From the NCBI RefSeq assembly GCF_006345805.1, contig NC_043003.1, positions 91,946,001 through 92,010,000 on the forward strand: a stretch of 64,000 bases of DNA, written 5' to 3'. The stretch comes from Octopus sinensis. Lineage: Eukaryota. The notes under the pieces were generated by a model that worked only from the letters and a program-made list of their open reading frames with translations, was not told where the DNA came from and did not search any database. The first letter of the stretch is position 1, and every line of letters begins with the position of its first letter. The position numbers and the translations under genes were made by a program. Shown in pieces: positions 8,725 through 48,914 of the stretch.

Positions 8725-8843
8725 ATGCTCCTCCACGCCCACCACTGCCAAGTGATGCCTGTCCTCCAAGACCTCCACCTCCAGAGACTGATGACGAGGA
8801 TGAATCTGCTTTCCCAGTGCCACAAGTCAATCAACCAATCATG
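8725..8843 (+). CDS. VCL: Vinculin exon, proline-rich hinge (partial gene; upstream exons outside window)
   Basis: ttgctttcag acceptor, gtaagt donor; encodes (D)APPRPPLPSDACPPRPPPPETDDEDESAFPVPQVNQPIM, matching the vinculin hinge; phase 1 in, phase 0 out. Confidence 0.93.
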
Positions 8844-11119: not shown

Positions 11120-11235
11120 ATGGCAGCTCATGACCTACATATGGAAACCAAGCAATGGTCTAGTAAAGACAATGAAATTATTGTAGCTGCAAAGAAAATG
11201 GCTCTTCTACTTGCGAAACTCTCCCATCTTGTTAG
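11120..11235 (+). CDS. VCL: Vinculin exon, tail domain start
   Basis: cccttaccag / gtgag sites; MAAHDLHMETKQWSSKDNEIIVAAKKMALLLAKLSHLV(R), like vertebrate ...KWSSKGNDIIAAAKRMALL; phase 0 in, phase 2 out. Confidence 0.96.
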
Positions 11236-13900: not shown

Positions 13901-16320
13901 GATCTCACCATCAAACATTGTGTGTTCCACGTACATGTATGTGCATTTATGTTTGCATTTATGTTAATTTGTGTATAAACAGACAGAAATCAAAATATAT
14001 TAATGTGAAAAATGTCTGTGAAAAAAGGAGTGACCTAATTATTGTTTGGTTTCCTTAACTTATTCATTAAAATCCATGATACTGGCTCACTCTGGCCTGG
14101 TTGGTCATAGCTGTGCCATATGCAATATGGATAAACAAAAGTAAATCCTTAATTAAATAGCAAACAGCAAAGTTTCTCTTGTCTAGAGTTATGTGTTTTG
14201 TGTTTGTGTGTATGCTTTGTTTTCTTATTTTATTTATTTGTTCTTTTATCATTTATATATTTCATTTATAAATCTAAAGCTTAAATAACTTGATTACCTT
14301 AAGAAATTTATCAGTATATTATTTGCCCAACATTAAGAAAGAGAGGAAAAGAGTAAAAAAACAAACACAACAAACAAAAAAGGTATATTTCTACTTGAAG
14401 CACTAATACCACGACTTGCTACTTGCAGTTGTCAGGAAAATTGCAAATGGATATGGTGTACTGTTCACAAGACGTAAGCTCTTTATGTATGGAAGGTAGT
14501 TTGCTTTTGGTGTTGACATTACCAGGAAACTTTCATTTCCTGGGAGAAAAAAAAATTAAATTATGAAAGAAGAAAAAAAAACCCCTACTCGCTCCTGTAT
14601 TTGGACAAAATTCAATCAACCCCTTTCTTTTGTTAACCCTTATTAAAAAAAAATCTTGTTGATTTTTTTCTTGCTTTTTTTGCTATATAATGAATGGTTT
14701 TCGCCCTTTCAACCTTCCCTCATGTTTTTGTTGGATGTGAGGTTTAGAATTATATTTAATTTGGTGTCTTAACATTCTGAATAAAATTCCCTTTGAGTCT
14801 GGCTTTACTTTTTGTACATCTAGAGACCATTGGGTGGTGGGGAGAACAAGAAAAGACTTCCAATAATGCTTGTTGTTTAAATCAATTACAGAATTAGGTG
14901 GAATTTAATTTCAGTGTCAGATTTATTCTAACAACAACTCAAGTATTCCTTCATTTAGCTTCAGGAGAAGTAGAACCGTAGTTTTCTATTGTTGTTTTTG
15001 TTTATTGTTTATTTAGCCCCCCCAGGTCAACTTTGAGCAAACCTGTGATCAAATGCATTCCATGACCCTCCTGTATCTAGGACTACATTATCCTATGTAT
15101 TTTTCCTGGACATTAGTTTGTACATGATAGGTGTCTTTAGTTCTTTGAAACAGCTTAAACGAATTCAAAAACCCATTACAGCAACTGTTTGAAAACATCA
15201 CAATGCATTTTCTCATTAGTTCTCCTTCTTTTACTCTGCCAATTAGAAATTCTAATTAATGTCTATTGTAACAGAGGGTGTTGAAATTGTATTGAATATA
15301 TTAATATTACCCCCACCACATCCTATTACTCTGATTCTTTGTTATTTCATTTTATTTATTTACTTTTTTATGAAGGCTTCCTCACTACCAAAAGCAAACA
15401 GTCTTTTCATCTTAAGGCCGCAGGCATGACTGAGCCATTTTCTTCTGTTGAGAACGAAATTTCTTGTTCAAATTCCTTCTCAAATTGCACAAATATTTAC
15501 ACACACATACACATGCATGCACATACTCACATGCAACACACACACACAAGCACACACACACACGTATAAAAGTACACAGAGGTAGAGGCTTGCACAAACA
15601 TGCAGGAGTATACACATACATGCTCACACTCATGCATGTGCACACTCATACACAAGACACACACATGCCTAAGCATACCAGTCATCAAAGGTGCTTCTAA
15701 GTGTTTCCAGCACTATAGTTCTCGGAGATTCGCAACCTGCTAGAAACAACTATCAAATCTTCCTCAGATTTTTTCTACCGTCTCAAAAAAAAAAAGGAAG
15801 GACACATTGAACAGTGCATATGTTAGATATTTCAATAGATAGAATGGTCATGGATGGAATATTTTTGGTCACTTGTCTGCTCAGTCAGTAATGACCTGGA
15901 GTTCAGCACTGTACATATGTGATCATATACTTAAGTTTACAGATACTTCTAGATGTATAAATGCATATGAACGTTTACATACACTTTTAAAAAAAACATG
16001 CATGCATACACACACACACACACATCCATGTAAAAAGTACCCGTAAAGGTACTGAGTAAAAGCACCCAGCTGCCATTGTAAAGTGGTTGGCTTTAGGAGC
16101 CTGGGTAAGTCTTCAGCTGGTTAGTTTCTGTCAAACCATCTAGCCCATGCCAGCATGGAAAACGGATGTTAAGTGATGATGAGGATGATGCTACACACAC
16201 ACACACACATGTATATATATATGCTTATATATATATAGATTCAGATGAATATGGTGCTTAAGTTTAAGGCACCAGAATTTTGTGTGGTATTATCCATATA
16301 AATTAAATGGAGTGATTATA

Positions 16321-20228: not shown

Positions 20229-20352
20229 AGGTGAAGGTGGAAGCAAGAAAGATTTGATTGCAACTGCTAAAGCTATAGCTGAGGCCTCAGAAGAAGTGAC
20301 CCGGTTAGCGAAGATCCTTGCCCTTGAATGTACTGACAAGAGAATGAGAACT
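20229..20352 (+). CDS. VCL: Vinculin exon, tail domain
   Basis: tccaccag / gtaagc sites; [41 protein letters not shown]; phase-compatible with both neighbours. Confidence 0.96.
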
Positions 20353-21313: not shown

Positions 21314-21598
<285 letters not shown>

Positions 21599-26931: not shown

Positions 26932-26970
26932 AGCCAATTCCAGCACCTGATGGTAGCGAGATTGCCTGTG
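26932..26970 (+). CDS. VCL: Candidate 39-nt cassette exon of vinculin (inserts EPIPAPDGSEIAC)
   Basis: tgattctccag acceptor after a ~48-nt AG-free stretch, TG|gtaatt donor; symmetric phase 1, stop-free; TGCATG at 27001-27006 and ACTAAT at 27094-27099 downstream. Confidence 0.78.
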
Positions 26971-27601
26971 GTAATTTCTTCTCATTTCTTGACAATTTTG
27001 TGCATGGTTTGTTTGAACATAGCTGCAAAAAAAAAAAAGAAAAAATCTCTACCAAGAGTCTCCACACAAAAGCCACGATATGCCATGCCAACTACTAATA
27101 TCATTTTGTTATTTTAACATACATATATGTGAACCTGTGAGTGCTATGAGTGTATGTTTATATGTGTGCCGTTTGTATGTGTCTGAAATGAATGTTTAAG
27201 CTAAATGTTGTTTAAACTGATATGTTTAGTGTAGTTTAGTTCTACTAAATTGTAATCTAAAACAAACAATAATCAATTAACTAAGAGAATAAATGAACAC
27301 ATTTCAGTAAATTCTAAAGCACATGTGAGTCTAACAGTAAAATCCAAACTCTCAGTTTATGTCATGTAGCTCTAATCAGTTGCACGTAACCATCACATAT
27401 AAACAGTAGTGGAAAGAAATCAAGTGTTTGTTTAATAATAGTTATTTACCATGTAGTGTTTAATGACAGTTAATAAATAATGTAATAGTTAACCAAAAAA
27501 AAAAGAAAAAATACTAATTTATCCATCCAAGATTTTTGTTTTAAGGTATGACTTTATTTATCGAAAATTGGTAGGAATGGTTCACTTATATATATATATA
27601 T

Positions 27602-27697
<96 letters not shown>

Positions 27698-27779
27698 TAC
27701 ATACCAAATTACTGGAAATGATATGGAATTTATAGGGCATAAAAAATAAAGAACACTATATATATATATACAAATAAGT

Positions 27780-27888
27780 TCAGCAAATTTAGATGCACCA
27801 GAATTTTGTATGGTGTTATCCATATAAATTCCATGGGGTGATTATAATCAAAATAAGCAACTGAAGTTATTCTTGTTGCTTATTTTGA

Positions 27889-27929
<41 letters not shown>

Positions 27930-28215
27930 GCAAATAAGTAACAAGGATGTCCAGGAATTAGTGCATTATGGCCATTTCAAGCGGCTCCATTTTATTAATC
28001 AATGCAAGCATTACATCAATTTGAAATAAGACCATACAGGTTTTCAACATATAGGATACCCCATTATAATTTTATAGCAAATCTTTCATCAGAACTAGAG
28101 AATAAAAGAATGCACTAATACCTGAACATTCTTGTTACTTATTTGCTTTTTATTCACCTAACTTCGAGCTGTGCAGAGACAATATCGGACTGACTTGGTG
28201 CCTCAACTTAAGTAC
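27780..28215. mobile_element. Remnants of the repeat family seen at 16240-16435, probably Penelope-like terminal-repeat derivatives
   Basis: Shared GCACCAGAATTTTGT...GATTATAATCAAAATAAGCAAC; 14-bp IR at 27848-27888; 40-bp IR at 27928-27967 / 28109-28148; flanked by (TA)n. Confidence 0.5.
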
Positions 28216-29675
28216 CTAATTCAACTGAATCTTATATATATATATATATATATTCTAGAGAGACTAAAGGTATATTTGTCAGTTTACTTATTCCAGATAC
28301 TTTAATTTGTATACTTACTTGTACAAGGTATATTGCATTAGCTCACACAATTATATGAATTATAGTTCCTTATTCACTATGTATAGTGATTCTAAATGAA
28401 TTTTACATTTTGTTATGAGAATTATTATTTAAATTTACATTTCATCTATATTCGACAACACAACTGTTCTGACACTCTCTACATTAATTAGTTATTTTCC
28501 TCAAATATTAACTATAATTCAAGATTAAAAAAATAAGACTTTAGCTGTTATTTAGCTGCTATTTAGCCCCAGGTAGGCTCCGACTGAGGCAACTGACATT
28601 CAAAAATATTCCACTCATGACCTCTTGGCATGACACAATTTGAACACAACATTTTTTGATGTCTTTTTTTCTTAGATAAAAGTATGATTAGAGGGAGAGA
28701 TTTGGTTTGTTATTTCTGGCATGTTGTTGGACTATAAGTGGACACTTTCATTGGTTCTATTCTTTTAAATACTTTCAGTGGTGAACTTAAAATAAGGCTG
28801 AAGCAAACTAGATATTTAAAAAAAAATGAACTGGAGATCCCTATATATCAAATCTCGTTAGGGTCAGCTTTGTGCTTTCATCTCTTTAGAGTCTTATCAT
28901 ATGTTAATTCTAAGTTGAAATCATGTGAAGGTCAACTTTGCCATTTGTCCTTCTGAGGTCAATAAAATAAAGTACCAGTCAAGTACTGGGGTCAGTAATA
29001 CTGACAAACTGCCTACCCTAAAAATTGTTAGGCTTGTGCCTAAATGAGAAACAACTATTTACATGTTACTATGTTATTTCTCAATGAACAGTAACTTCTC
29101 TGAATTACATTTTTGTAAGACCTGATTCCCCCCCCTCTCTCAGACACACAGTGATTATTATTGTTTTAGTGGTTTTGGATCCTCAAGAGTTCATATGACC
29201 ATTGGGAGTCCATATAAGATTTTGTTGTTAGAGTTTATGTGCAGATAAATTATTTATACTTCTACAATACACAAAATAGTTTCATTTTTTTTTTATAAAT
29301 ACAATTCCTAATAATATCTAATTATAAAAAAATATAACAGGATATTTTAAATACTGGATGGTTATGAGGATTCATCTGAGTAAAATAGGAATCAAAGGCA
29401 AAAAATGGTTGAAAGCCACCACTTTACATAGAGTGTTTGATTAAAAAGAAAACAGAACAACTCCAAAATTCTATGAGTGTGTATGTGTGTAATAAAACAG
29501 TTTAATCATCCTTTTTTGTTTCTTGACTTGGGCAACAGTCTGTTTAATAAAATATCTTTACAAAAGCAAAAAAGCAATGCTACATACACACACTTAAGAT
29601 ATCATTGTGATGTTGCCATAATTTCTTGCTATTAACACTTTGCCGTTTATATTCACTGCCGCTTGGGGATCACAG

Positions 29676-29681
29676 AATCAA
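29676..29681 (+). CDS. VCL: Candidate 6-nt microexon of vinculin (AATCAA)
   Basis: First AG (cacag) after a ~74-nt AG-free zone, then 6 nt, then gtaagt; TGCATG at 29696-29701 and 29845-29850; phase-1 symmetric. Confidence 0.4.
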
Positions 29682-30200
29682 GTAAGTACTGTTGATGCAT
29701 GCTGAACAGTTTGCAGTTATTTTTTTTTTAATGAGTTTATTTTTCTTTTTTTTTTTTTCTGATTTGAAAAAGAGTTGGGGTTTGTGCGAGGGTGTTACAT
29801 GCCTGTGAAACCTTCACCACATTACTTTGTTCACACCACCCAACTGCATGCAATCCTATCCTTATTTTGCCTCATATATATAATTGACATTATACAGAGA
29901 GAGTTTGAAACACACACACAAAGGTTTGGGAAAACAAACAAGAAATAGAACTCAACTTTCTGCTGATTAGAAATATTAAAATTATATACCTTCTTTTTTT
30001 TTAATTACATTTTTGATTGGAGAAAAGTTAGAAAAGTGACTCGAGGAATGAGAATTTCGTTAGTTCGGTAAATGCTTCCGCAAAGCTCTTGGGTCTTGAA
30101 TCACTTTTATAACAATTTACTGATGAAATAAATCAAAAAAGAAAGAAAAGAGTTATTTCCCTTTACACCCTTTTCTTTCTCGAAATGCTTTGTCGTAAAG

Positions 30201-30212
30201 GTTTGGCTGTGG
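30201..30212 (+). CDS. VCL: Candidate 12-nt microexon of vinculin (inserts GLAV)
   Basis: Long pyrimidine tract + TGC + gtaaag acceptor, GTTTGGCTGTGG, then gtaagc donor; phase-1 symmetric and stop-free. Confidence 0.6.
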
Positions 30213-31780
30213 GTAAGCTGGATCTGTTACGGCTTGGCTTGGTGCCTTGTCATAAGCTGTTTTGCTGCTCTCGTTCTGCTAAGCCCTTACGGAAAGGCAT
30301 GAACATTTGCCCACCTGTTTCTTCCTGTCCCCTAACCTCAAGAAATTGAAACATATTCGAAATATATAAATAAAATGCTAAATATATCTATATTTGATTG
30401 ATATAATCCATATTCTTTTGTCTTTTTACAAAGTTTTATTTTCTTTAGTTTTAAATTGTTTAGCTTGTTTTATTCCATGATGCTTATTTTGATGAGAAAC
30501 CTACCGCCTTTATTAAGAATTGATGTGTTCCTAGCCAAATATTTTATTTAATCCCACTCTCCTTTTTTTCTCCCCCAAGATATCTTCCCTTGTTAGATTT
30601 ATTAACAGCATTTAGTATTTGAACCCATTTAGAATATCTTAGTTTCTGGCATTCTTTCTCCCCAAAGTTTGAGTATTTAGACTTCCTTCCTGTCCATGAT
30701 GAGAGTTCAAGGCAGATGGTAAAATATGTAGTTGTCTGTTTTGCACATTAAATGTTGCATTGAGATCAGCTATTTTTATTTTTACTTATCTATTTATTTA
30801 TAATGAATTTTATATTTTGTATAGTTACTTCCATATTTTCAAATCAAATCAGATAAATGAATGATATTGTGTGAATTGTAGACAGTCTGACAAAATGCGT
30901 TGGAGTAATTCGGTTATCTCCCTTTATGTTTAACTCTACCAGCTTTAATTTTGCTTTTTGTCTTGTCACTCTCTCTGTGAAATTTGGTGCCTTGTGCTCA
31001 TATTAGAATTCAATATTTCATCCTAAATTGGATTGAGAAAATATAGTACTAGCGTTGAAGTCACTTGACTAACTTTATTCCCAGAATTGGTAGCTTTACA
31101 TCTCTGTAAGAAATTATTATGGCAGGATTGGTACAGTGGTGAATGAAATGCCTATTTAGTTGTATACCTTTACATTCTGAGTTCACAGAGTATTGATTCA
31201 CTCTGCCTTTTATCATTTCTGAGGGCTAGAAAATAAACATAAGGTAAGTACTAGGGTCAATGTAATTAATCCCCACCCCTCCCAAAATTTCAGGTCTTAT
31301 GACTATTGTGGAGAGGATCATTATTATTATTAAAGTGATGAGCTGGCAGAATTGTCAGCACACCAGGCAAAATGTTTAGCAGCATTTTGTCTGTCTTTAC
31401 ATTCTGAGTTTAAAGTCCGTTGAGGTAGTTTTTGCCTTTCATCCCTTTGGGGTTGATGAAATAAGTTGAATGTTGGGGCTGATGTAATCGACTTACATCC
31501 TCCCCCAAAATTTCAAGTTTTGTGCTTTTATTGAAAAAATTATTTATATTATTAGCAAACAGTAAAATTGAAGTGAGAGTTTTTACATTTTCTTGCTGAA
31601 TGACCGATAGCTTCCCAGTCTCTCATAAAAAGAGAATGTACAAAATATGTATTTTGTTTTTACAATAAACTTCTTGCTTATATTCATGTTTTATTTTAAT
31701 ACTGTCTCTTACATCAACCATCCAGAGTAAATTAAAAATCCAGTAGTTATATGAATGTAAATGAAGGTATAGCAAATGTA

Positions 31781-33021
31781 TTGGGTCATACCATAAATAA
31801 TGTGATTTTCAATTGCATGAACTAAGAGTCAGAGAGGGATGGGATACACTTCCTGCATCAACTTGTTATAAAAGCAGGTAGTAATATTACCTTCTACTTA
31901 TTCTTAGTGCAAGTTTTGAAGAGTACAGTTCGATTTTAAGTTTGTTTTTTTTTCAAATCTGTAATGGGAATGACAAAGGAGCATATTATTTTACTTATTT
32001 TGCTTTATGAGTTCAATAAAGGCAACAATACAATGGAAAGTGTGAGGAATATTAATGCAGTATATGTGGATTGGACAATAAATGGAAACCAGTGTCAACA
32101 GTGGTTCCATAAATTCTGAGCCAGAAACTACAGCCTAGAAGACAAAACTCATCTGTAGACCTCAATGAGGAAGTCCTGCAAACCCTCCTGGAACAAAATT
32201 CCATCGTAACTTTTGAAGAACTAGCAGAGAAGCTTGGATTCGGTCAGTCAACCATTGATCGACACCTGTGTAACATCAGAAAAGTCAGAAAATTGAGTCA
32301 ATGGGTCCCTCACAAACTTTCTGAGTCTAATCACATGCAGAGAGTGAATGTGTGCCTTTCTTTGCTGTCACGTCTCACGAATGAACTTTTTTGGACTGAA
32401 TAATGATTGGTGACGAGAAATGAGTCTCTATAAAGATGTCTGAAGACAGTGGGTAGGGAAAGGAGAAACACTGGCACTCCAGGCTACAGGTCTTCATCTA
32501 TGTAAGATGGTGTTATCTGTTTGGTGGGTTATGAAAGGTTTAATCAACTTCGAACTTTTAAACTCAAACCAAATGATAACAAAGGTGATCTACTGCAAGC
32601 GCTAGAAGAAAAATGACCATCTTTAGTTTCAAGACGGAAGGTGTTCTTCCATCAGGATAATGCTCGGCCACATACAGTGAGGATGACATTCCAAAGGCTG
32701 GAGCAGCTTGAATGGGAAACAATAACCCACCTACCATATTCACTGGACAATACACCATTTGATTATCATTTATTCTGCAGTCTTCAAAATCATTTAGATG
32801 GAAAAAATATGAATTCTGTAGACAAGGTCAGAACAGTGCTGGAGAAGTATTTTTTATCATGGACAAGTGAATTCTGGAAGAGGGGCCTTGCAAGTCTACC
32901 ACATAGATGGAAGAACATTGTAGAAAAAGGAGAGTATATTTTAGATTAAAAAAGAACTTCATTTATCTTAATTTTGAAAAATAAAAAGTATAAAAAACTG
33001 CATTATTTATGGGAGACTCAA
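31781..33021 (+). mobile_element. Full-length mariner (DD34D) transposon with dead transposase, in the vinculin intron
   Basis: Imperfect TIRs TTGGGTCATACCATAAATAATG / CATTATTTATGGGAGACTCAA, TA on both sides; WVPHKL, GDEK, HQDNARPH and YSLDNTPFDYHLF motifs; 34 residues between the 2nd and 3rd Asp; stops and frameshifts. Confidence 0.92.
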
Positions 33022-33683: not shown

Positions 33684-33850
33684 GTTCTCAAGAAGACCAA
33701 GATGCAACAGAGATGTTAGTCGGTAATGCTCAGAACCTTATGCAGTCAGTCAAAGAAACTGTGCGTGCTGCAGAGGCTGCATCAATCAAGATCCGTGTTG
33801 ACTCTGGCTACACCATCAGATGGATCCGTAAAAGGCCATGGTATACATAA
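33684..33850 (+). CDS. VCL: Vinculin terminal coding exon
   Basis: ctattttccag acceptor; (G)[54 protein letters not shown] with TAA at 33848-33850; typical vinculin C-terminus. Confidence 0.97.
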
Positions 33851-35603: not shown

Positions 35604-37518
35604 ATTATCATTATTATCTTATCAACATTGAATCATTGTTTTAGGAATCACTAACTTCATGTCAAAAGATCTGGTTAAATAATTATTTTCATACATTTAA
35701 AATTAATTTTGAATATATTATTTTTATCTTGGTTGGAACTGTTTATTACTAGAAATGACCGAAGAGAGGCTTTGTTCTGTACTAATTGCATACACACACA
35801 CACACAATCACACATACATAATGCTTGTATGTATTTGCATTACAATAATTATGATAATGATAATAATTGTAGTTATACTACGAATAATGCTCATTGTAGT
35901 ACTAAAGAGATTACATATAACTGATTGTAGTCCCAGCTTGTTCCAGATAGGAAAATGGTTCTCAATCATTTGGAATTAGGCACACACACTTGCACACAAA
36001 GGGTCACATTTTAAATGCAAGCAACTAGCAAGCACATTTATTCAATATGTTCCTTATGATACTCCTGCAATATGTTTCTTATGATACTACTGCAAATATA
36101 GGGTTGTTTCAATTACCCCACCATCCTGTAAAATTTGACCTAATGCTTATTCAATGACCAAGGCTGCTGTGCTTAACTAAATACCTCAGTCTCTTAGTCT
36201 CAGGTTCAAATACCACTACTGAGGGGTGGGTGAATAGTATTAATTATATATTCGGGTCAATGCAAGCAACATATACCTCTATCTAAAAAGAGCAGTTTTC
36301 TGTCACACCAAAAAGAAAAATGTTGTTGTTATAATTTTGGATTAGCAGAATCTTTAGAGCATGAGACCAAAAGCCTATGCTGTATTTTGTTGCAACTTTT
36401 TACATTCTGAGTTCAAATCCTGCTGAGATCAATTTTGCCTTTTCTCCTTTTGGGGTTAATAAATAAACTACCAGTGAAGTTTTAGGTTAGCTTTGATTGA
36501 CTACCTCACATCCTAGATTTCTGGCTTTGTACCATGTCAGAAAGTATTATTATTATTATTATTATCATTATTATCTTATCAACATTGAATCATTGTTTTA
36601 GGAATCACTAACTTCATGTCAAAAGATCTGGTTAAATAATTATTTTCATACATTTAAAATTAATTTTGAATATATTATTTTTATCTTGGTTGGAACTGTT
36701 TATTACTAGAAATGACCGAAGAGAGGCTTTGTTCTGTACTAATTGCATACACACACAATCACACATACATAATGCTTGTATGTATTTGCATTACAATAAT
36801 TATGATAATGATAATAATTGTAGTTATACTACGAATAATGCTCATTGTAGTACTAAAGAGATTACATATAACTGATTGTAGTCCCAGCTTGTTCCAGATA
36901 GGAAAATGGTTCTCAATCATTTGGAATTAGGCACACACACTTGCACACAAAGGGTCACATTTTAAATGCAAGCAACTAGCAAGCACATTTATTCAATATG
37001 TTCCTTATGATACTCCTGCAATATGTTCCTTATGATACTCCTGCAATATGTTTCTTATGATACTACTGCAAATATAGGGTTGTTTCAATTACCCCACCAT
37101 CCTGTAAAATTTGACCTAATGCTTATTCAATGACCAAGGCTGCTGTGCTTAACTAAATACCTCAGTCTCTTAGTCTCAGGTTCAAATACCACTACTGAGG
37201 GGTGGGTGAATAGTATTAATTATATATTCGGGTCAATGCAAGCAACATATACCTCTATCTAAAAAGAGCAGTTTTCTGTCACACCAAAAAGAAAAATGTT
37301 GTTGTTATAATTTTGGATTAGCAGAATCTTTAGAGCATGAGACCAAAAGCCTATGCTGTATTTTGTTGCAACTTTTTACATTCTGAGTTCAAATCCTGCT
37401 GAGATCAATTTTGCCTTTTCTCCTTTTGGGGTTAATAAATAAACTACCAGTGAAGTTTTAGGTTAGCTTTGATTGACTAACCTCACATCCTAGATTTCTG
37501 GCTTTGTACCATGTCAGA

Positions 37519-43429: not shown

Positions 43430-45888
43430 GGCCCTGGAAAAAGCAATAAATGGGAAATAACTCATAGAAATAGAAAACGTCTTTTACGTTTCGAGCCTAC
43501 GCTCTTCGATAGAAAGATACACAGAAAAAAACAAGGAGAGAAAAAAATGCGTGTAGGAGCTAACGATCTATCATGGCGTCCTGACTTCGGACAGTGGTCA
43601 GACGCGAGAAGGACAGTAGGGGAGATAACAGGGTCAAGTGACTTCAAGTGACTGGGTGGGTTTATAGGGGGAGGGGAAGGTGGGTATATGAGGAGAGAAG
43701 AGAGTGGGGCGGGGATGGGGGAGAGTGAGAGGGGATAGAAGAGGGGGGAGGGGTATGGGGAGGAGGAGGAGGAGAGGAGGGGTATGGGGAGGAGGAGTGG
43801 TAGGGAGAGGAGGAGGAGGGAAGGGGAGGAGGAGGGAGAGGGGAGAGAAGGGGAAGAGGGAAGAAGAGAGAAGAAGAGGGAAGAAGGGAAGAGGAGGGAA
43901 AGAGAGTAGGGGTGAAAAGATGTAGGACTGAAGAGAAGTAGGAGTCGGGGAGGAGGTTAGATGAAAAGGGAGAGAGTTGAGCCCAAATGGCGTAAAAGAG
44001 CAAAGAGAGAAGATCAATCCTTGTTCACGGCGTAAGCAGGAATCCAGATGGCCTCTGTGCAAGGACAATCCGAACACAGATGAGTGTTGCAAGGAGTGAT
44101 CGGTGGAGCGGAAATGGCGCGAGACAGGAGTGTCATTGGCGAGGTGGATGTCTCGGAGGTGTTCCGCGAACCGGTCAGCCAAGCGGCGTCCCGTTTGTCC
44201 GATGTACAGGGAATGGCAGAGGGAGCAGGAGATGCAATAGATGATATTGCTGGAGGTGCAGGTGAAGGAGTCGATGATGGGTGCCGGTGAGGAGGGTGGT
44301 ATTGGAGAGGTAAGGGCAAGTGCGGCAACGTGGGCACTAGCAGGGGAAGAGCCAGGTTGGGAGGTAGGGTCGGGGAAGAAACTGTGGACCAAGAGGTCTC
44401 GTAGGTTATGGGCTCGTTTGAAGGAGGGGAGGGGTCGGTTAGGGAAGAGGTGTGAAGTGGACGGGTCGGACTGGAGATGCCGGAAAGCTCGAAGAAAGGT
44501 GCGTTGGAGAGGTAGGGTGGTGGGGTGGTATGTGAGGGGAAAATGGAGGCGGGAGACTGCAGGGCGGGTTCGGGGGGAGAGACCAGATGCACGGTCTACG
44601 GAACGTGCTCTGGCAAGGGCGGTGTGGATAGTAGTGAGGGGGTATCCACGTAGGATGAAGTGGCGAGCCATGAGTTGAGACTGAGTCTCAAAGTCATGTT
44701 CATCACTACAGAGCCTACGTAGACGGAGGAATTGGGAACAGGGGATGGAAAGCTTGGTGTGTTTGGGGTGGGAGGAAGAGAAGTTGAGGTATGAGTGTGA
44801 GTCTGTGTGTTTGTAGTGAATGGAGGTGGTAAGAGTGGAGTGATGAATGCTGACCGAAATGTCGAGGAAGGAGACAGAGGTGTTGGAGATAGTGCAGGTG
44901 AAGTGGAGGGCAGGATGGAAGGATTGAACGAAAGAGAGAAAGGAGTCTAGATGTTCGCGGGAGAGTGAGGTGGAACCGATACAGTCGTCAATGTAACGAC
45001 CGTATAGCTCGGGAGTGGGACCAGTGAAACTAGAGAATATTTGGGCCTCAACATAGGCAACGAACAGGTTCGCATAGTTGGGGCCCATTCGCGTTCCCCT
45101 GGCCACTCCCGAGACCCGCGAACGAGAAGCAGTTAAGAGAAAGGACAAGTTCGGCCAGACGAATGAGTGTGGAGGTGTCGGGTTCGGGGTTGGGGCAGAG
45201 GTCGAGAAAGTGTTGAAGTGCACGCAGTCCTTCGTGGTGAGGGATGAGGGTATAGAGGCTCTGGATGTCCATTGTAAAGAGGAGTTTGGAGGAGCTGGGA
45301 GGAAAGGAGAAAGAGTTGAAAAGCCGGAGAGCATGGTTGGTGTCGTGTATGTGAGAGGGAAGAGACGCCACTAGGGGGGCAAGGACACGGTCGAGGTATT
45401 TTGAGATGAGCTCCGTGGGGCAGTTACAGGCGGAGATGATGGGGCGGCCAGGGTTGTTGGGTTTGTGGATTTTGGGGAGGAAGTAAATGGTGGGGGTGCG
45501 TGGGGTTCGGACAATGAGGTTGGATGCGGTGTGGGGGATACAGGAGGACGAGATGAGGTCGTGGACAGTAGAGGAGACCGTCTGTTGGTAGCTAAGCGTG
45601 GGGTCGGAGGACAGAGGGGAGTAGAAGGAGGTGTCATTGAGTTGGCGGAGCGCCTCGGCCCTGTAGAGGTCCGCGCACCACGCCACCGGCCGGTTTAATG
45701 ACAATGTCAGCGCGCCGTCGGAGGGAACGAAGAGACGAGAGCTCGGCCTGGGAGATGTTGAGGCAGCGGTGGCGCCTGGAGAAGTTGGACCGCTCCAACG
45801 CGCGCTGACAGGCACCCGCGAAAAGATCCACTGCTTGGAACTGGCCGGGGGAAGGCGTCCACTTTGATGGTCGGCGGCCCAGGTCAGT
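43430..45888 (-). mobile_element. Penelope-like retroelement (RT + GIY-YIG endonuclease), 5'-truncated and frameshifted
   Basis: LPKIHKPNNPGRPII, TMDIQSLYT, MGPNYANLF, RYIDD, SQFLRLRRLCS and IIYCISCSLCHSLYIGQTGRRLADRFAEH; frameshift near 45115; pyrimidine-rich 3' region. Confidence 0.95.
43480..43517 (-). ncRNA. Minimal hammerhead-like motif with altered core
   Basis: Minus strand: TCTTT CTATCGAA GAGC-GTAG-GCTC GAAAC GTA AAAGA. Confidence 0.6.
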
Positions 45889-45900
45889 GATATATATATA

Positions 45901-48306
45901 CTAGCAGAGATAACCAGCATTGCCCGGTTACATTCAATTGAAGAATTAGACGTTTTTGTTATATATATATATGGATACACACACACACACACACTCACAC
46001 ATATATATATATATATGTATATTAATATAAATACATGAAAGTAAATGAAGTTTGTTAAAAAAAAAAGGGGATCATGTATATACCTCCTGGCTGTTGAGAT
46101 TATAACACCTCGTTGTAAATAATGTTCCTTGTTTTTCATTGTGGAGCATATACAAAAAGGTTTCCTTTGGTTCCTACTCTTGAGCAGCCAACATAAAGTT
46201 GCCCATGCGAGAAGCAGGGCTCTTCCAAGAGAAGACCAGCTAAAGAGAGGGTTTGACCCTGAGATTTGTTAATGGACATGGCAAAGCTGACACGAAGGGG
46301 GAATCGCAGTTTTCTGAATGTAAATGGAATTTCTGCTCCTGATGGAGTAAGAGGAATTCTTGGGATAAAGACGTCATCACCTTTTCCACATCCAGAAAGA
46401 ATGATCGCCTCGATAACGTGTGACATCATTTTCTTTATCACCAGTCATGTTCCATTGCAAAGTCTTGGTGGTTCCAGATTGCGGAGTAGCATTACAGGAG
46501 TTCCAACTTTAAGTGCTAATATGTGTGGAGGTAGTCCAGGAGGCTCCAGTGAGTTGAGAAATTCAGGAGGATAGTTCACAACTTCATTTATATCTGAAAT
46601 TGTATCGACAGACTTGTAAGTGTGTATAGTGCTGGGAAGAGAATGCATTAGCTGTTGATTAATTTTGTTAACAGCAACGTTTTTTGGAACTAATATTGCT
46701 CTTTCACAGCCTATTGTGATTTTGTTAGTTTTGTGTGAAGTTGGGAAAGACTTTGTTTCTGAGGTCATCTACAGAATTAACAACAGAGAGAGGAAAATGA
46801 CCACACTTCCTTTAGTCCTGCAGCATCGAGAGGCATCTTGCCTTCACCAAGTGTCAAAATGTCCTGTGCAAACTTTGTGAACATTTTGTCGCTGTGTAGC
46901 TGAGCTCTCATGTTAGTGGTGAGACTGAGGATTGTAACATGATGCCACAGGGTAGAGGACTTTAGGCATGCTTGGACTTCATCTGCTCTAGTGCCTTTCG
47001 GAATGACAGGAAGAGTTTGCCTGAAATCACCTGACAACAGAAGCGTTACACCTCCCATTGGAGCCTGACAGTCTCGGATGTCTTTCAGGGCTCTATCTAA
47101 TGCTTCCAAAGCTCCCTTGTGAGCCATAGTGCACTCATCTCAGACAATTAGATGACACATTTTAAGTACTTGTCCCTGATCTGAGCTTTTGTTGATTTTG
47201 CATGAAGGCATTTCGGATGCTGCTAAATTGAGAGGGGGTTTAAAAGTTGAGTGTGCTGTCCTGCCACCGGGTAACAAAGTAGCTGCAATGCCAGAGGAGG
47301 CTTCAGCTACTGCAATGTCCTGATGCTGCCTAACTTCTGCAAGGAGAAGCTTTGTAATAAATGTTTTTCATGTCCCTCCAGGAGCATCGAGGAAGAAGAT
47401 TCGTCCCTCACGTTGGCGTACACTGTTAAGAATAGTTCTGTAGGCCTGCAGCTGGTCCGGAAGTAACTTAGGCTCATTTTCAACAATGTACTTTGAAAGC
47501 GCTTGAGTGTCGTAGGTTGTTTCACGAATGACAACAGTGGGAAGGCTATTTGACCCTGACCTGAATGCTTGTGGCAGGCCATACGTCGACAATTCATTTC
47601 CACCCAGTTTAGCAATTCTGTCTTCAATGTCAATGAGTGCTTTGTTATAGATTTCATTGCTGATACCCTCCATGTCAGGATAGAGCAGTTGAGCTTGGCG
47701 CTGAAAGTCTTCAGCCAGGTTGTCTCTATATTTGAGCCATAGAGTGGCCGGATCACACAGTTCGCATGCCTGTAGTAATACTGCAAATAGTGCCCTGAGA
47801 CTTTTTGGTGATTGTGATAAAGCAGCCTCTCCTAAAGTTGCATCCCATTGTACACCATCTTCTAACAGACCTTGTCGATAGCAGGCTTCTCTGTATGTTG
47901 TGCAGACATGTCCATGAACGGTTTTTAGGGCCTGGAAACACGTTGGCTCTCTGACCTAATGCAGTAGTAGACGAAGGTAGAAGCACTCTTGTTGAGTGGG
48001 ATGCACTGTGTATACTCGCCCAAGGCAAGTGTGAAACTTAATGCCAGGGTATCCATGAACATTTTGACCTGCTTTCCGTGGGGCCCATTTTTTCCCATTC
48101 CAAGTGTAGTACGATGGAATCTGTGGATACAGCAAGGTTTGAGCGAATGGATCCACTTGACAAAGCTTGAAGAATGCAGTAAGTGTGCTATCCCTTGGTT
48201 CCTCTGCCAACAGAGAAGCATTAGCATCGGTGAAGTACACTCTTTGACCATTTTCCAGGTGCACTGCAAGCTGTTGAATGGTGGAGTGTCGTTGGTGAAT
48301 TGGAAA

Positions 48307-48310
<4 letters not shown>
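45901..48310 (-). mobile_element. Helitron 3' part: decayed PIF1-like helicase plus 3' terminus
   Basis: FLDAPGGT, LLLSGDFRQTLPVI, GTPVMLLRNL.PPRLCNGT, FAMSINKSQGQTL and FSHGQLYVGCSRV in broken frames; minus-strand end CCGGGCAATGCTGGTTATCTCTGCTAG. Confidence 0.93.
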
Positions 48311-48350
<40 letters not shown>

Positions 48351-48364
48351 ATTTATATAAACAC

Positions 48365-48914
48365 ACACAAATATTAGAGAGAATCCACTATGTGGACGCT
48401 CTTATGCTAAAAATAGATCCGCAATGGTCTCATCCACTAAGAATTGTTCTCGAGAAAAATTTAGCACAACTATGAACGTAAGCGAGCAGGACAAATGAAA
48501 AATAACAAAAATATAGATTAACTCCAGACAATTGTTTCACTGTTAATAAATTATGCAATTTTACTTACACAATAAATCTACCGATCATCAGTGAGATTCG
48601 TCATAAAATATAATTTGTCGAACTGCACGCCAGATATTAACACGAAGTCAAAGATACGAGTAGTTCGGCCTATTAAATTCGCAGTTATATTCAAATGCCC
48701 TCGTTCGAGCGCGCCAAATTCCTGGAAATAAATACTGCATAAATAATTCACTGCAGTAGTTAGTGCCGGTTTGAGAACATATTAATTTATAATTAAAATC
48801 AAAATAAGGGTGAAAAAATTGGATATTAATTTAATAACATCAATTTAACACCAGTTAAAAAACTGAGATTCAGTAAATATTAATACACAAATATGAGAGA
48901 GAATCCATGATGTG
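48365..48914 (-). mobile_element. Solo Penelope-like terminal-repeat remnant
   Basis: 30-bp direct repeat at 48365-48394 and 48885-48914, internal hammerhead core, (TA)n on both sides. Confidence 0.55.
48522..48595 (-). ncRNA. Type I hammerhead-like motif with intact core and long stem II
   Basis: Minus strand: CTCA CTGATGA ...46 nt... GAAAC AATT GTC TGGAG. Confidence 0.6.

What the first reader, a model, noticed from the sequence alone, without database searches (positions are those of the whole stretch)
26932..30212. Possible combinatorial microexon cluster rewiring one loop of the vinculin tail
Seen: the 12-kb last intron holds three short segments (39, 6 and 12 nt), each with an AG acceptor and GT donor, each phase-1 symmetric. 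All 8 inclusion combinations stay in frame and stop-free between ...KATMLGAQ and (G)SQEDQD. Established: this is the helix 4-5 loop of the vinculin tail, just after the [11 protein letters not shown] segment holding the I997/V1001-equivalent F-actin-binding surface; vertebrate metavinculin inserts elsewhere, after KWSSK. Inference: this lineage may tune actin or lipid binding of vinculin by tissue-specific combinatorial microexons, an alternative to the metavinculin strategy.
Basis: partly seen in the sequence, partly recalled or inferred. Interest (0 to 1): 0.8.

Follow-up and report, generated by a model that had tools for sequence, protein, structure and literature searches.

The report
Two real vinculin-tail microexons, one false
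Two of the three short segments (39 nt and 6 nt) are genuine, anciently conserved alternative exons that lengthen a loop next to the actin-binding surface of octopus vinculin; they are already in RefSeq gene models though apparently unstudied, and the third (12 nt) is a chance match.

Summary
The window holds the 3' part of an Octopus vinculin gene. Those criteria alone are at chance level: the intron holds 422 such segments.

The 39-nt segment (26932-26970, EPIPAPDGSEIAC) and the 6-nt segment (29676-29681, AATCAA) are real cassette exons.
- O. sinensis RefSeq isoforms show all four combinations of the two.
- De novo RNA-seq contigs from another cephalopod carry each exon.
- Both exons, in the same order, occur in scallop and Lingula genomes and in oyster and Pecten isoforms.
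- The 39-nt exon also occurs in an annelid model and a chelicerate-like transcript. A crab lacks it.
- Nucleotide changes within molluscs are all synonymous.

The 12-nt segment is not supported. No protein carries it, O. bimaculoides lacks its AG acceptor, and its flanks are among the least conserved in the intron.

So this is not a cephalopod innovation and there are 4 combinations, not 8. It is an old, at least lophotrochozoan-wide module in the helix 4-5 loop, starting 4 residues after an actin-contacting residue. AlphaFold models the insert as a flexible loop. The 6-nt exon has the UGC-rich upstream signature of neuronal microexons. Function is untested and I found no paper on it.

The parts
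21473..21563 (+). Penultimate constitutive vinculin exon ([30 protein letters not shown] plus 1 nt). It encodes tail helix 4 with the I997/V1001/M1005-equivalent actin contacts.
   Evidence: Aligned to human and chicken Vt. Matches RefSeq isoforms.
26932..26970 (+). 39-nt cassette exon, phase 1-1, encoding EPIPAPDGSEIAC. Real and deeply conserved.
   Evidence: In O. sinensis, O. vulgaris and O. bimaculoides isoforms and in Logan RNA-seq contigs L016 and L017. Present in scallop and Lingula genomes. 6-7 nt differences and 0 aa differences versus a second cephalopod and a scallop. The most conserved island of the intron versus O. bimaculoides, 98% against a median of 92%.
29676..29681 (+). 6-nt cassette microexon AATCAA, phase 1-1. 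It adds E-S and turns the junction Gly into Ser (GAQ-G-SQ becomes GAQ-ESS-SQ). It has a gtaagt donor and two TGC motifs within 40 nt upstream.
   Evidence: In O. sinensis isoforms X1, X3, X4, X7 and X9-X11. The identical AATCAA is in 4 RNA-seq runs of another cephalopod. ESS is in Pecten and Crassostrea isoforms. AATCTA in a scallop and AATCCA in Lingula sit at the same relative place, with gtaagt and TGC motifs.
30201..30212 (+). 12-nt AG...GT segment (would add GLAV). A chance match, not an exon.
   Evidence: No protein carries it. The acceptor AG is absent in O. bimaculoides, which reads cgtaaaTGG. Flanks are 83% identical, below the 5th percentile of the intron. It is one of 422 such segments.
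33684..33850 (+). Last coding exon ((G)[12 protein letters not shown]...RKRPWYT and the stop codon). It encodes helix 5 and the C-terminal arm.
14429..14473 (+). Separate 45-nt cassette exon (replaces R with SCQENCKWIWCTVHKT) in the helix 2-helix 3 loop of the same tail. It is not part of the finding, but it belongs to the same isoform system.
   Evidence: RefSeq isoforms. Position and splice sites. A second cephalopod has SCESTCKWIWCTAHKI.
11120..11235 (+). Constitutive tail exon (MAAHDLHMETKQWSSKDNEII...SHLV). It shows there is no splice site at the metavinculin position.
20229..20352 (+). Constitutive tail exon (GEGGSKKDL...DKRMRT), encoding helix 3.

Best explanation
Shown: the last intron of this Octopus vinculin gene (most likely O. 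sinensis) holds two genuine cassette microexons, 39 nt and 6 nt. Both are phase 1-1 and are included independently, giving four tail isoforms. The 12-nt segment is a chance AG...GT match. The 39-nt and 6-nt pair is an old module. It keeps the same order in cephalopods, bivalves and a brachiopod. The 39-nt exon is also in gastropods, a chiton, an annelid and a chelicerate-like arthropod.

Inferred mechanism: inclusion leaves the five-helix bundle intact but lengthens the helix 4-helix 5 loop by 13 and/or 2 residues. The loop is acidic, and the insert begins 4 residues after the Met that corresponds to human M1005, an F-actin contact. The longer loop most likely changes how the tail engages or bundles actin filaments, or how neighbouring tails pack along a filament. 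The near-invariant 13-residue peptide may also act as a short docking motif. The 6-nt exon adds serines next to acidic residues, which could be a phosphorylation site. Its UGC-rich 3' splice region suggests control by the neuronal Srrm (eMIC) microexon programme. The 39-nt exon lacks that signature and is probably regulated differently.
For: Exons are real:
- O. sinensis RefSeq isoforms carry no insert, 6 only, 39 only, or both.
- De novo RNA-seq contigs of a second cephalopod (90% aa identity) carry 6 only in four runs and 39 only in two runs.

Conservation:
- The 13-aa insert is in many molluscs, in Lingula and in Owenia. The ESS variant is in Pecten and Crassostrea.
- The genomic order 39 then 6 is seen in a scallop and in Lingula.
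- A chelicerate-like transcript carries a 39-nt exon encoding APIITPDGSQIIC.
- Within molluscs all nucleotide changes are synonymous.
- The 39-nt exon is the top conserved island against O. bimaculoides.

Location:
- The PDB alignment places the insert in the human loop 1007-1018.
- AlphaFold gives H4 as 883-902 and H5 as 922-959. The insert, 905-920, is coil with pLDDT below 50.
- Metavinculin I1065, V1069 and M1073 (vinculin I997, V1001, M1005) contact actin. In alpha-catenin, the H4-H5 loop may be contacted by the C-terminal extension of the neighbouring domain on the filament (PMC7588232).

Regulation:
- There are 2, 4 and 3 TGC motifs within 42 nt upstream of the 6-nt exon in octopus, scallop and Lingula. 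Only 7%, 0.5% and 4% of AG sites in the same introns reach those counts. The 39-nt exon has none.
- UGC near the 3' splice site marks eMIC-dependent exons in flies and mammals (PMC8797185).

12-nt segment rejected.
Against: - No expression data by tissue were available, so tissue specificity, including the neuronal reading, is inference only.
- No biochemical data exist for any insert.
- AlphaFold gives low confidence for the insert, so its contacts are unknown.
- RefSeq isoforms are model combinations. Linkage between distant events is not proven, although each local junction needs read support.
- The 6-nt exon could not be checked in O. bimaculoides because of an assembly gap.
- The UGC enrichment in octopus alone is weak (7%).
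- A crab has the same intron but no recognisable 13-aa exon, so the module is not universal in protostomes.
- The chelicerate assignment rests on 54/56 tail identity to Limulus, not on sample metadata.
Confidence: 0.85

Rival explanations
1. One reading: three microexons (39, 6 and 12 nt) form a cephalopod-specific combinatorial system with 8 isoforms. It evolved as that lineage's alternative to metavinculin.
For: All three have AG/GT borders and keep the frame. The 12-nt donor gtaagc is good.
Against: The 12-nt segment is in no isoform or transcript ORF retrieved. O. bimaculoides lacks its AG. Its flanks are among the least conserved of the intron. The other two exons are shared with bivalves and a brachiopod, and the 39-nt exon also with an annelid, so they are not a cephalopod invention.
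Confidence: 0.03
2. The short segments are annotation artefacts or splicing noise with no function.
For: Gene-model pipelines can propagate rare junctions.
Against: Independent de novo assemblies from six RNA-seq runs contain the exons within full-length ORFs. The peptide is identical in octopus, scallop and the annelid Owenia, and one residue different in Lingula, with only synonymous nucleotide changes within molluscs. The order and splice signals are the same in three genomes.
Confidence: 0.02
3. The exons are real, but their main effect is not on F-actin binding. The extended loop may instead tune head-tail autoinhibition, bind a partner protein or metal (it has a conserved Cys, and the neighbouring helix 2-3 loop exon is Cys/His-rich), or act as a regulated phosphorylation site.
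For: The insert is predicted to be flexible and exposed. It is nearly invariant, which is typical of a linear motif rather than a spacer. The 45-nt exon in the helix 2-3 loop, which by the up-down topology of the bundle lies at the same end, encodes C-x3-C-x4-C-x2-H. ESS next to (Q/E)ED resembles an acidophilic kinase site (inference).
Against: The insert starts 4 residues from an actin-contact residue on the major actin interface. No partner or modification is known. The model returned no coordinates, so head contacts could not be examined.
Confidence: 0.3

Closest known systems
Metavinculin (vertebrate VCL exon 19 isoform)
   Same: An alternative exon inside the actin-binding tail of vinculin that produces a tissue-restricted isoform with altered actin handling (PMC3365496 and PMC7747745 abstracts).
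   Different: Metavinculin adds 68 residues after KWSSK and replaces helix 1 (visible in the 3vf0 alignment). Here 13 and/or 2 residues are added to the helix 4-5 loop, and no splice site exists at the KWSSK position. The taxa differ too: vertebrates versus lophotrochozoans and some arthropods.
Neuronal eMIC/SRRM3-4-dependent microexons
   Same: A very short (6 nt), frame-preserving, deeply conserved exon that alters a surface loop beside an interaction surface. UGC motifs lie close to the 3' splice site (PMC8797185).
   Different: Neither neural inclusion nor Srrm dependence has been shown. The 39-nt exon has no UGC motif. Vinculin is not mentioned in the main text of the fly eMIC study.
Alpha-N-catenin isoform with a 48-residue insert in its actin-binding domain (recalled from memory, not verified here)
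   Same: A paralogous five-helix actin-binding domain with an alternative insert, which I recall lies near the helix 4-5 loop.
   Different: A vertebrate gene with a much longer insert. The position could not be checked with the tools, and the literature search gave nothing usable.

Membership tests
Vinculin (Pfam PF01044), tail five-helix bundle | Sequence membership and a five-helix tail with a conserved helix 4 actin surface | tested here: met
   Exon-by-exon Pfam hits on G000 contig C7. E about 1e-65 to Vt structures, with I997, V1001 and M1005 conserved. AlphaFold helices.
Metavinculin-type splice variant | An insert of about 68 residues directly after KWSSK, replacing helix 1 | tested here: not met
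   KQWSSKDNEII is contiguous within exon 11120-11235. The inserts found lie in the H4-H5 and H2-H3 loops.
Cassette microexon | Short, frame-preserving, alternatively included, with transcripts showing both inclusion and skipping | tested here: met
   For the 39-nt and 6-nt exons, isoforms with and without each exist. This is not met for the 12-nt segment.
Cassette microexon | Conservation of exon and flanks across species | tested here: met
   39-nt exon: 98% flank identity versus O. bimaculoides, and the same exon in scallop, Lingula and others. 6-nt exon: AATCAA, AATCTA and AATCCA in three genomes. Its flanks are untestable in O. bimaculoides because of an assembly gap.
eMIC/SRRM-dependent neuronal microexon | [quoted passage not shown] | tested here: met
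   6-nt exon: 2, 4 and 3 TGC motifs in 42 nt upstream in three phyla, against intron backgrounds of 0.28-0.65 per site. The 39-nt exon has none.
eMIC/SRRM-dependent neuronal microexon | Neuron-enriched inclusion and dependence on the Srrm eMIC domain | not testable with these tools
   No tissue-resolved RNA-seq or perturbation data were reachable.

The most novel reading that the evidence does not exclude
Protostome vinculin carries an ancient two-microexon switch in the helix 4-5 loop of its actin-binding domain. Its presence in both molluscs and a chelicerate-like arthropod suggests Cambrian-age or older origin. It is independent of metavinculin. In this reading, the near-invariant 13-residue peptide changes filament engagement or recruits a specific partner, and the 6-nt exon belongs to the neuronal eMIC programme. 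That would be an unstudied regulatory layer of a core mechanotransduction protein.
Probability: 0.3. Interest if true: 0.6.

Novelty: new member of a known kind. Interest (0 to 1): 0.45.

Why it matters
Vinculin is a central force-bearing link between adhesion receptors and actin. Its only studied tail isoform is the vertebrate metavinculin. This work shows that animals without metavinculin have a different, very old way to vary the same domain. They use two tiny exons placed right beside the actin-contact helix, one of them with near-invariant coding sequence from octopus to annelid. The isoforms are visible in RefSeq, but I found no paper on them. They therefore give a concrete, testable handle on how invertebrates diversify vinculin-actin coupling, and a possible link between the neuronal microexon programme and adhesion mechanics. 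The finding is real but not a discovery of unknown sequence features, and part of it (the 12-nt segment, the 8 isoforms, the cephalopod specificity) is wrong.

Tried and rejected
- Searches failed on a region/length mismatch of a padded query. One search repeated the search with a safe region.
- Looking up O. bimaculoides isoform X4 found nothing, because only the longest product of a gene is indexed. Isoform X1 worked.
- O. bimaculoides could not test the 6-nt exon. An assembly gap (L011 68219-68446) covers it.
- A search with a 90-aa tail fragment carrying GLAV returned mostly gene-caller read-through into introns and no cephalopod fragments. It was useful only as a negative for GLAV and for two arthropod-like inserts.
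- A crab intron scan found no homologue of the 13-aa exon: best score 14, against 72 in the octopus control.
- Literature searches for vinculin microexons or mollusc vinculin splicing found nothing relevant. A search on the alpha-N-catenin insert gave nothing usable.
- Rfam found no RNA family in the window.
- I did not fetch the O. vulgaris locus. The gene is likely over 100 kb and the species too close to be informative.
- I considered the in-frame 21-nt segment at 31085-31105, inside a conserved island, as a possible extra exon. No isoform contains it.
Full report
**Where the window lies.** The window is G000 contig C7:91946001-92010000 of a 2.72-Gb, 13,516-contig genome. Its + strand carries the 3' part of a vinculin gene. 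Pfam PF01044 matches it exon by exon, from 91874176 to 91979844 on C7. The tail it encodes is 100% identical to RefSeq Octopus sinensis and GenBank O. vulgaris vinculin over the part compared. The genome size and contig count suggest O. sinensis; that is my inference. The tail exons in window coordinates are 8725-8843, 11120-11235, 20229-20352, 21473-21563 and 33684-33850. All have canonical AG/GT borders.

**Checking the observation.**
- 26932-26970: 39 nt, ccag|...|gtaatt.
- 29676-29681: AATCAA, acag|...|gtaagt.
- 30201-30212: 12 nt, aaag|...|gtaagc.

All 8 combinations give an open frame between ...KATMLGAQ and SQEDQD. The stated criteria have no statistical weight, however. The 12,120-nt intron contains 422 AG-(3k up to 60 nt)-GT, phase-1, stop-free segments. 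Of these, 62 have a good donor and 18 also have a pyrimidine-rich acceptor. The question therefore had to be settled with outside evidence.

**The 39-nt and 6-nt segments are real exons.** I searched with the tail sequence against about 5.8 billion proteins and read the loop in every hit.
- EPIPAPDGSEIAC sits between GAQ and GSQEDQD in isoforms of O. vulgaris, O. bimaculoides and O. sinensis.
- Several O. sinensis isoforms read ...IACESSSQEDQD, which is the 39-nt exon followed by the 6-nt exon.
- The cluster members show all four combinations in O. sinensis: none (X5, X6), 6 only (X3, GAQESSSQEDQD), 39 only (X2) and both (X1, X4, X7, X9-X11).

Independent de novo RNA-seq assemblies from a second cephalopod (90% protein identity) agree. 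Full-length ORFs carry the 6-nt exon alone in four runs and the 39-nt exon alone in two runs. The 6-nt exon has identical bases, AATCAA. The 39-nt exon differs at 7 bases, all synonymous.

**The 12-nt segment is not an exon.**
- GLAV does not occur at this loop in any of the 362 proteins retrieved, including a search seeded with it.
- In the orthologous O. bimaculoides intron (L011) the acceptor reads cgtaaaTGGTTTGG, so there is no AG.
- The surrounding 200 nt are 83% identical. That is below the 5th percentile of windows in an intron whose median is 92%.
- The 39-nt exon and its flanks, by contrast, form the most conserved island of the intron at 98%.
- The 6-nt exon falls in an assembly gap of O. 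bimaculoides. This also explains why that species' models lack it.

**How old the module is.** A loop-focused search found the 13-residue insert in the following groups.
- Many bivalves and gastropods, and a chiton.
- The brachiopod Lingula (EPIAAPDGSEIAC).
- The annelid Owenia (EPIPAPDGSEIAC).

The 39+6 form (...CESSS...) is in Pecten maximus and Crassostrea gigas. Genomic loci show the same layout.
- In the scallop Ylistrum (L018), the penultimate exon, a 39-nt exon, a 6-nt AATCTA with a gtaagt donor, and the last exon follow in that order.
- In Lingula (L020) there is a 39-nt exon. Of seven AG-N6-GT segments downstream of it, exactly one (AATCCA|gtaagt) encodes ESS.

Octopus, the second cephalopod and the scallop differ at 6-7 of the 39 bases with no amino-acid change. 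Lingula has one change.

A Logan transcript contig (L021) has a tail 54/56 identical to Limulus. It carries a 39-nt, phase-1 exon encoding APIITPDGSQIIC at the same junction. A JGI fragment with an arthropod-like tail has another 13-residue insert, ESFPRREDGEIFG. A crab (Petrolisthes) has the intron at the same place but no recognisable exon. The module is therefore at least lophotrochozoan-wide and probably older, with losses.

**Where the insert sits in the protein.** HMMER alignment to solved vinculin tails places it in the human loop G1007-Q1018. By counting back from Q1066 in the sequence I recalled for human vinculin (not checked with a tool), the octopus [10 protein letters not shown] corresponds to K996-M1005. 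Mei et al. 2020 (PMC7588232) report two relevant points.
- Metavinculin I1065, V1069 and M1073 contact actin I345, I341 and P333/E334. These residues are vinculin I997, V1001 and M1005.
- For alpha-catenin, residues of the C-terminal extension lie close to the next binding site along the filament. They may contact the H4-H5 loop of the adjacent actin-binding domain.

An AlphaFold2 model of the 974-residue 39+6 isoform (43-sequence alignment, mean pLDDT 78.9) keeps helix 4 (883-902) and helix 5 (922-959). It models residues 905-920 as coil with pLDDT below 50. The exons thus enlarge a flexible acidic loop at the edge of the major actin interface without touching the bundle.

**Regulation.** The 42 nt upstream of the 6-nt exon hold 2 TGC motifs in octopus, 4 in the scallop and 3 in Lingula. 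Only 7%, 0.5% and 4% of AG sites in the same introns reach those counts. The 39-nt exon has none in any of the three. UGC enrichment near the 3' splice site is a hallmark of eMIC-dependent exons in flies and mammals. In non-vertebrate bilaterians that programme is restricted to neurons (PMC8797185). I infer that the 6-nt exon is a candidate neuronal microexon and that the 39-nt exon is controlled otherwise. No tissue data could be reached.

**Mechanism: what is shown and what is inferred.**
- Shown: two independent cassette exons, four isoforms, deep purifying selection and the loop location.
- Inferred: the longer loop alters filament binding, bundling or neighbour packing.
- Inferred: the near-invariant peptide may be a docking motif.
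- Inferred: ESS next to (Q/E)ED may add an acidophilic kinase site.
- Rival: the main effect is on autoinhibition or partner binding instead.

**Comparison with known systems.** This is not metavinculin. That insert follows KWSSK, and here KQWSSKDNEII lies inside one exon. It resembles conserved microexons that remodel surface loops. Searches of about 8.4 million papers found nothing on vinculin microexons or mollusc vinculin splicing. The exons are nevertheless already present in RefSeq and GenBank models, for example XP_036360818.1.

**Verdict.** This is a new, unstudied member of a known kind, of moderate interest.

Noticed in passing
window 14429-14473 (+): A further 45-nt cassette exon (SCQENCKWIWCTVHKT, a C-x3-C-x4-C-x2-H pattern) in the helix 2-3 loop of the same tail. 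By the bundle's up-down topology this is the same end as the H4-H5 loop. It is conserved in a second cephalopod. Oysters have an unrelated 21-residue insert in the same loop.
   Followed up: partly
window 31050-31150 (+): A second conserved island in the last intron, about 97% identical to O. bimaculoides. It holds an in-frame 21-nt AG...GT segment (31085-31105, ELVALHLC) with good splice signals. No isoform contains it, so it may be a regulatory element.
   Followed up: partly
window 32113-32946 (+): Two open frames that resemble a mariner-type transposase (...FHQDNARPHT...), my recognition only and not searched. This looks like a transposon remnant inside the vinculin last intron.
   Followed up: no
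window 43634-46268 (-): A GC-rich block (up to 55% GC in a roughly 32% GC region). It has long minus-strand frames carrying a reverse-transcriptase YIDDC motif and a GIY-YIG-like motif. It looks like a Penelope-like retroelement.
   Followed up: partly
window 46777-48387 (-): Frames with a helicase-like FFLDAPGGT motif, as in PIF1/Helitron-type elements.
   Followed up: no
window 35713-37383 (+): A direct repeat of about 0.96 kb just downstream of the vinculin stop. The frame at 35713-35976 recurs at 36670-36927 with a two-residue deletion, and the frame at 36234-36407 recurs identically at 37210-37383.
   Followed up: no
L011 68219-68446 (O. bimaculoides): An assembly gap lies exactly over the orthologue of the 6-nt exon. 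This probably explains why no O. bimaculoides RefSeq isoform has it.
   Followed up: yes
L020 16641-16682 and 18737-18778 (Lingula); P0141 (Littorina): Lingula has two copies of the penultimate exon. Littorina has a tandem duplicate of the 39-nt exon (EPIPAPDGSEIAV then EPIPAPDGSEIAC). These are possibly mutually exclusive exons.
   Followed up: no
P0243 (Mytilus trossulus); P0284, P0285, P0287 (vertebrate fragments): Mytilus has a different short insert at the same junction (AQEQECSEEDQE, 9 nt). Vertebrate read-through ORFs suggest that their intron lies after ...ESEQ, about 7 codons downstream of the protostome position.
   Followed up: no
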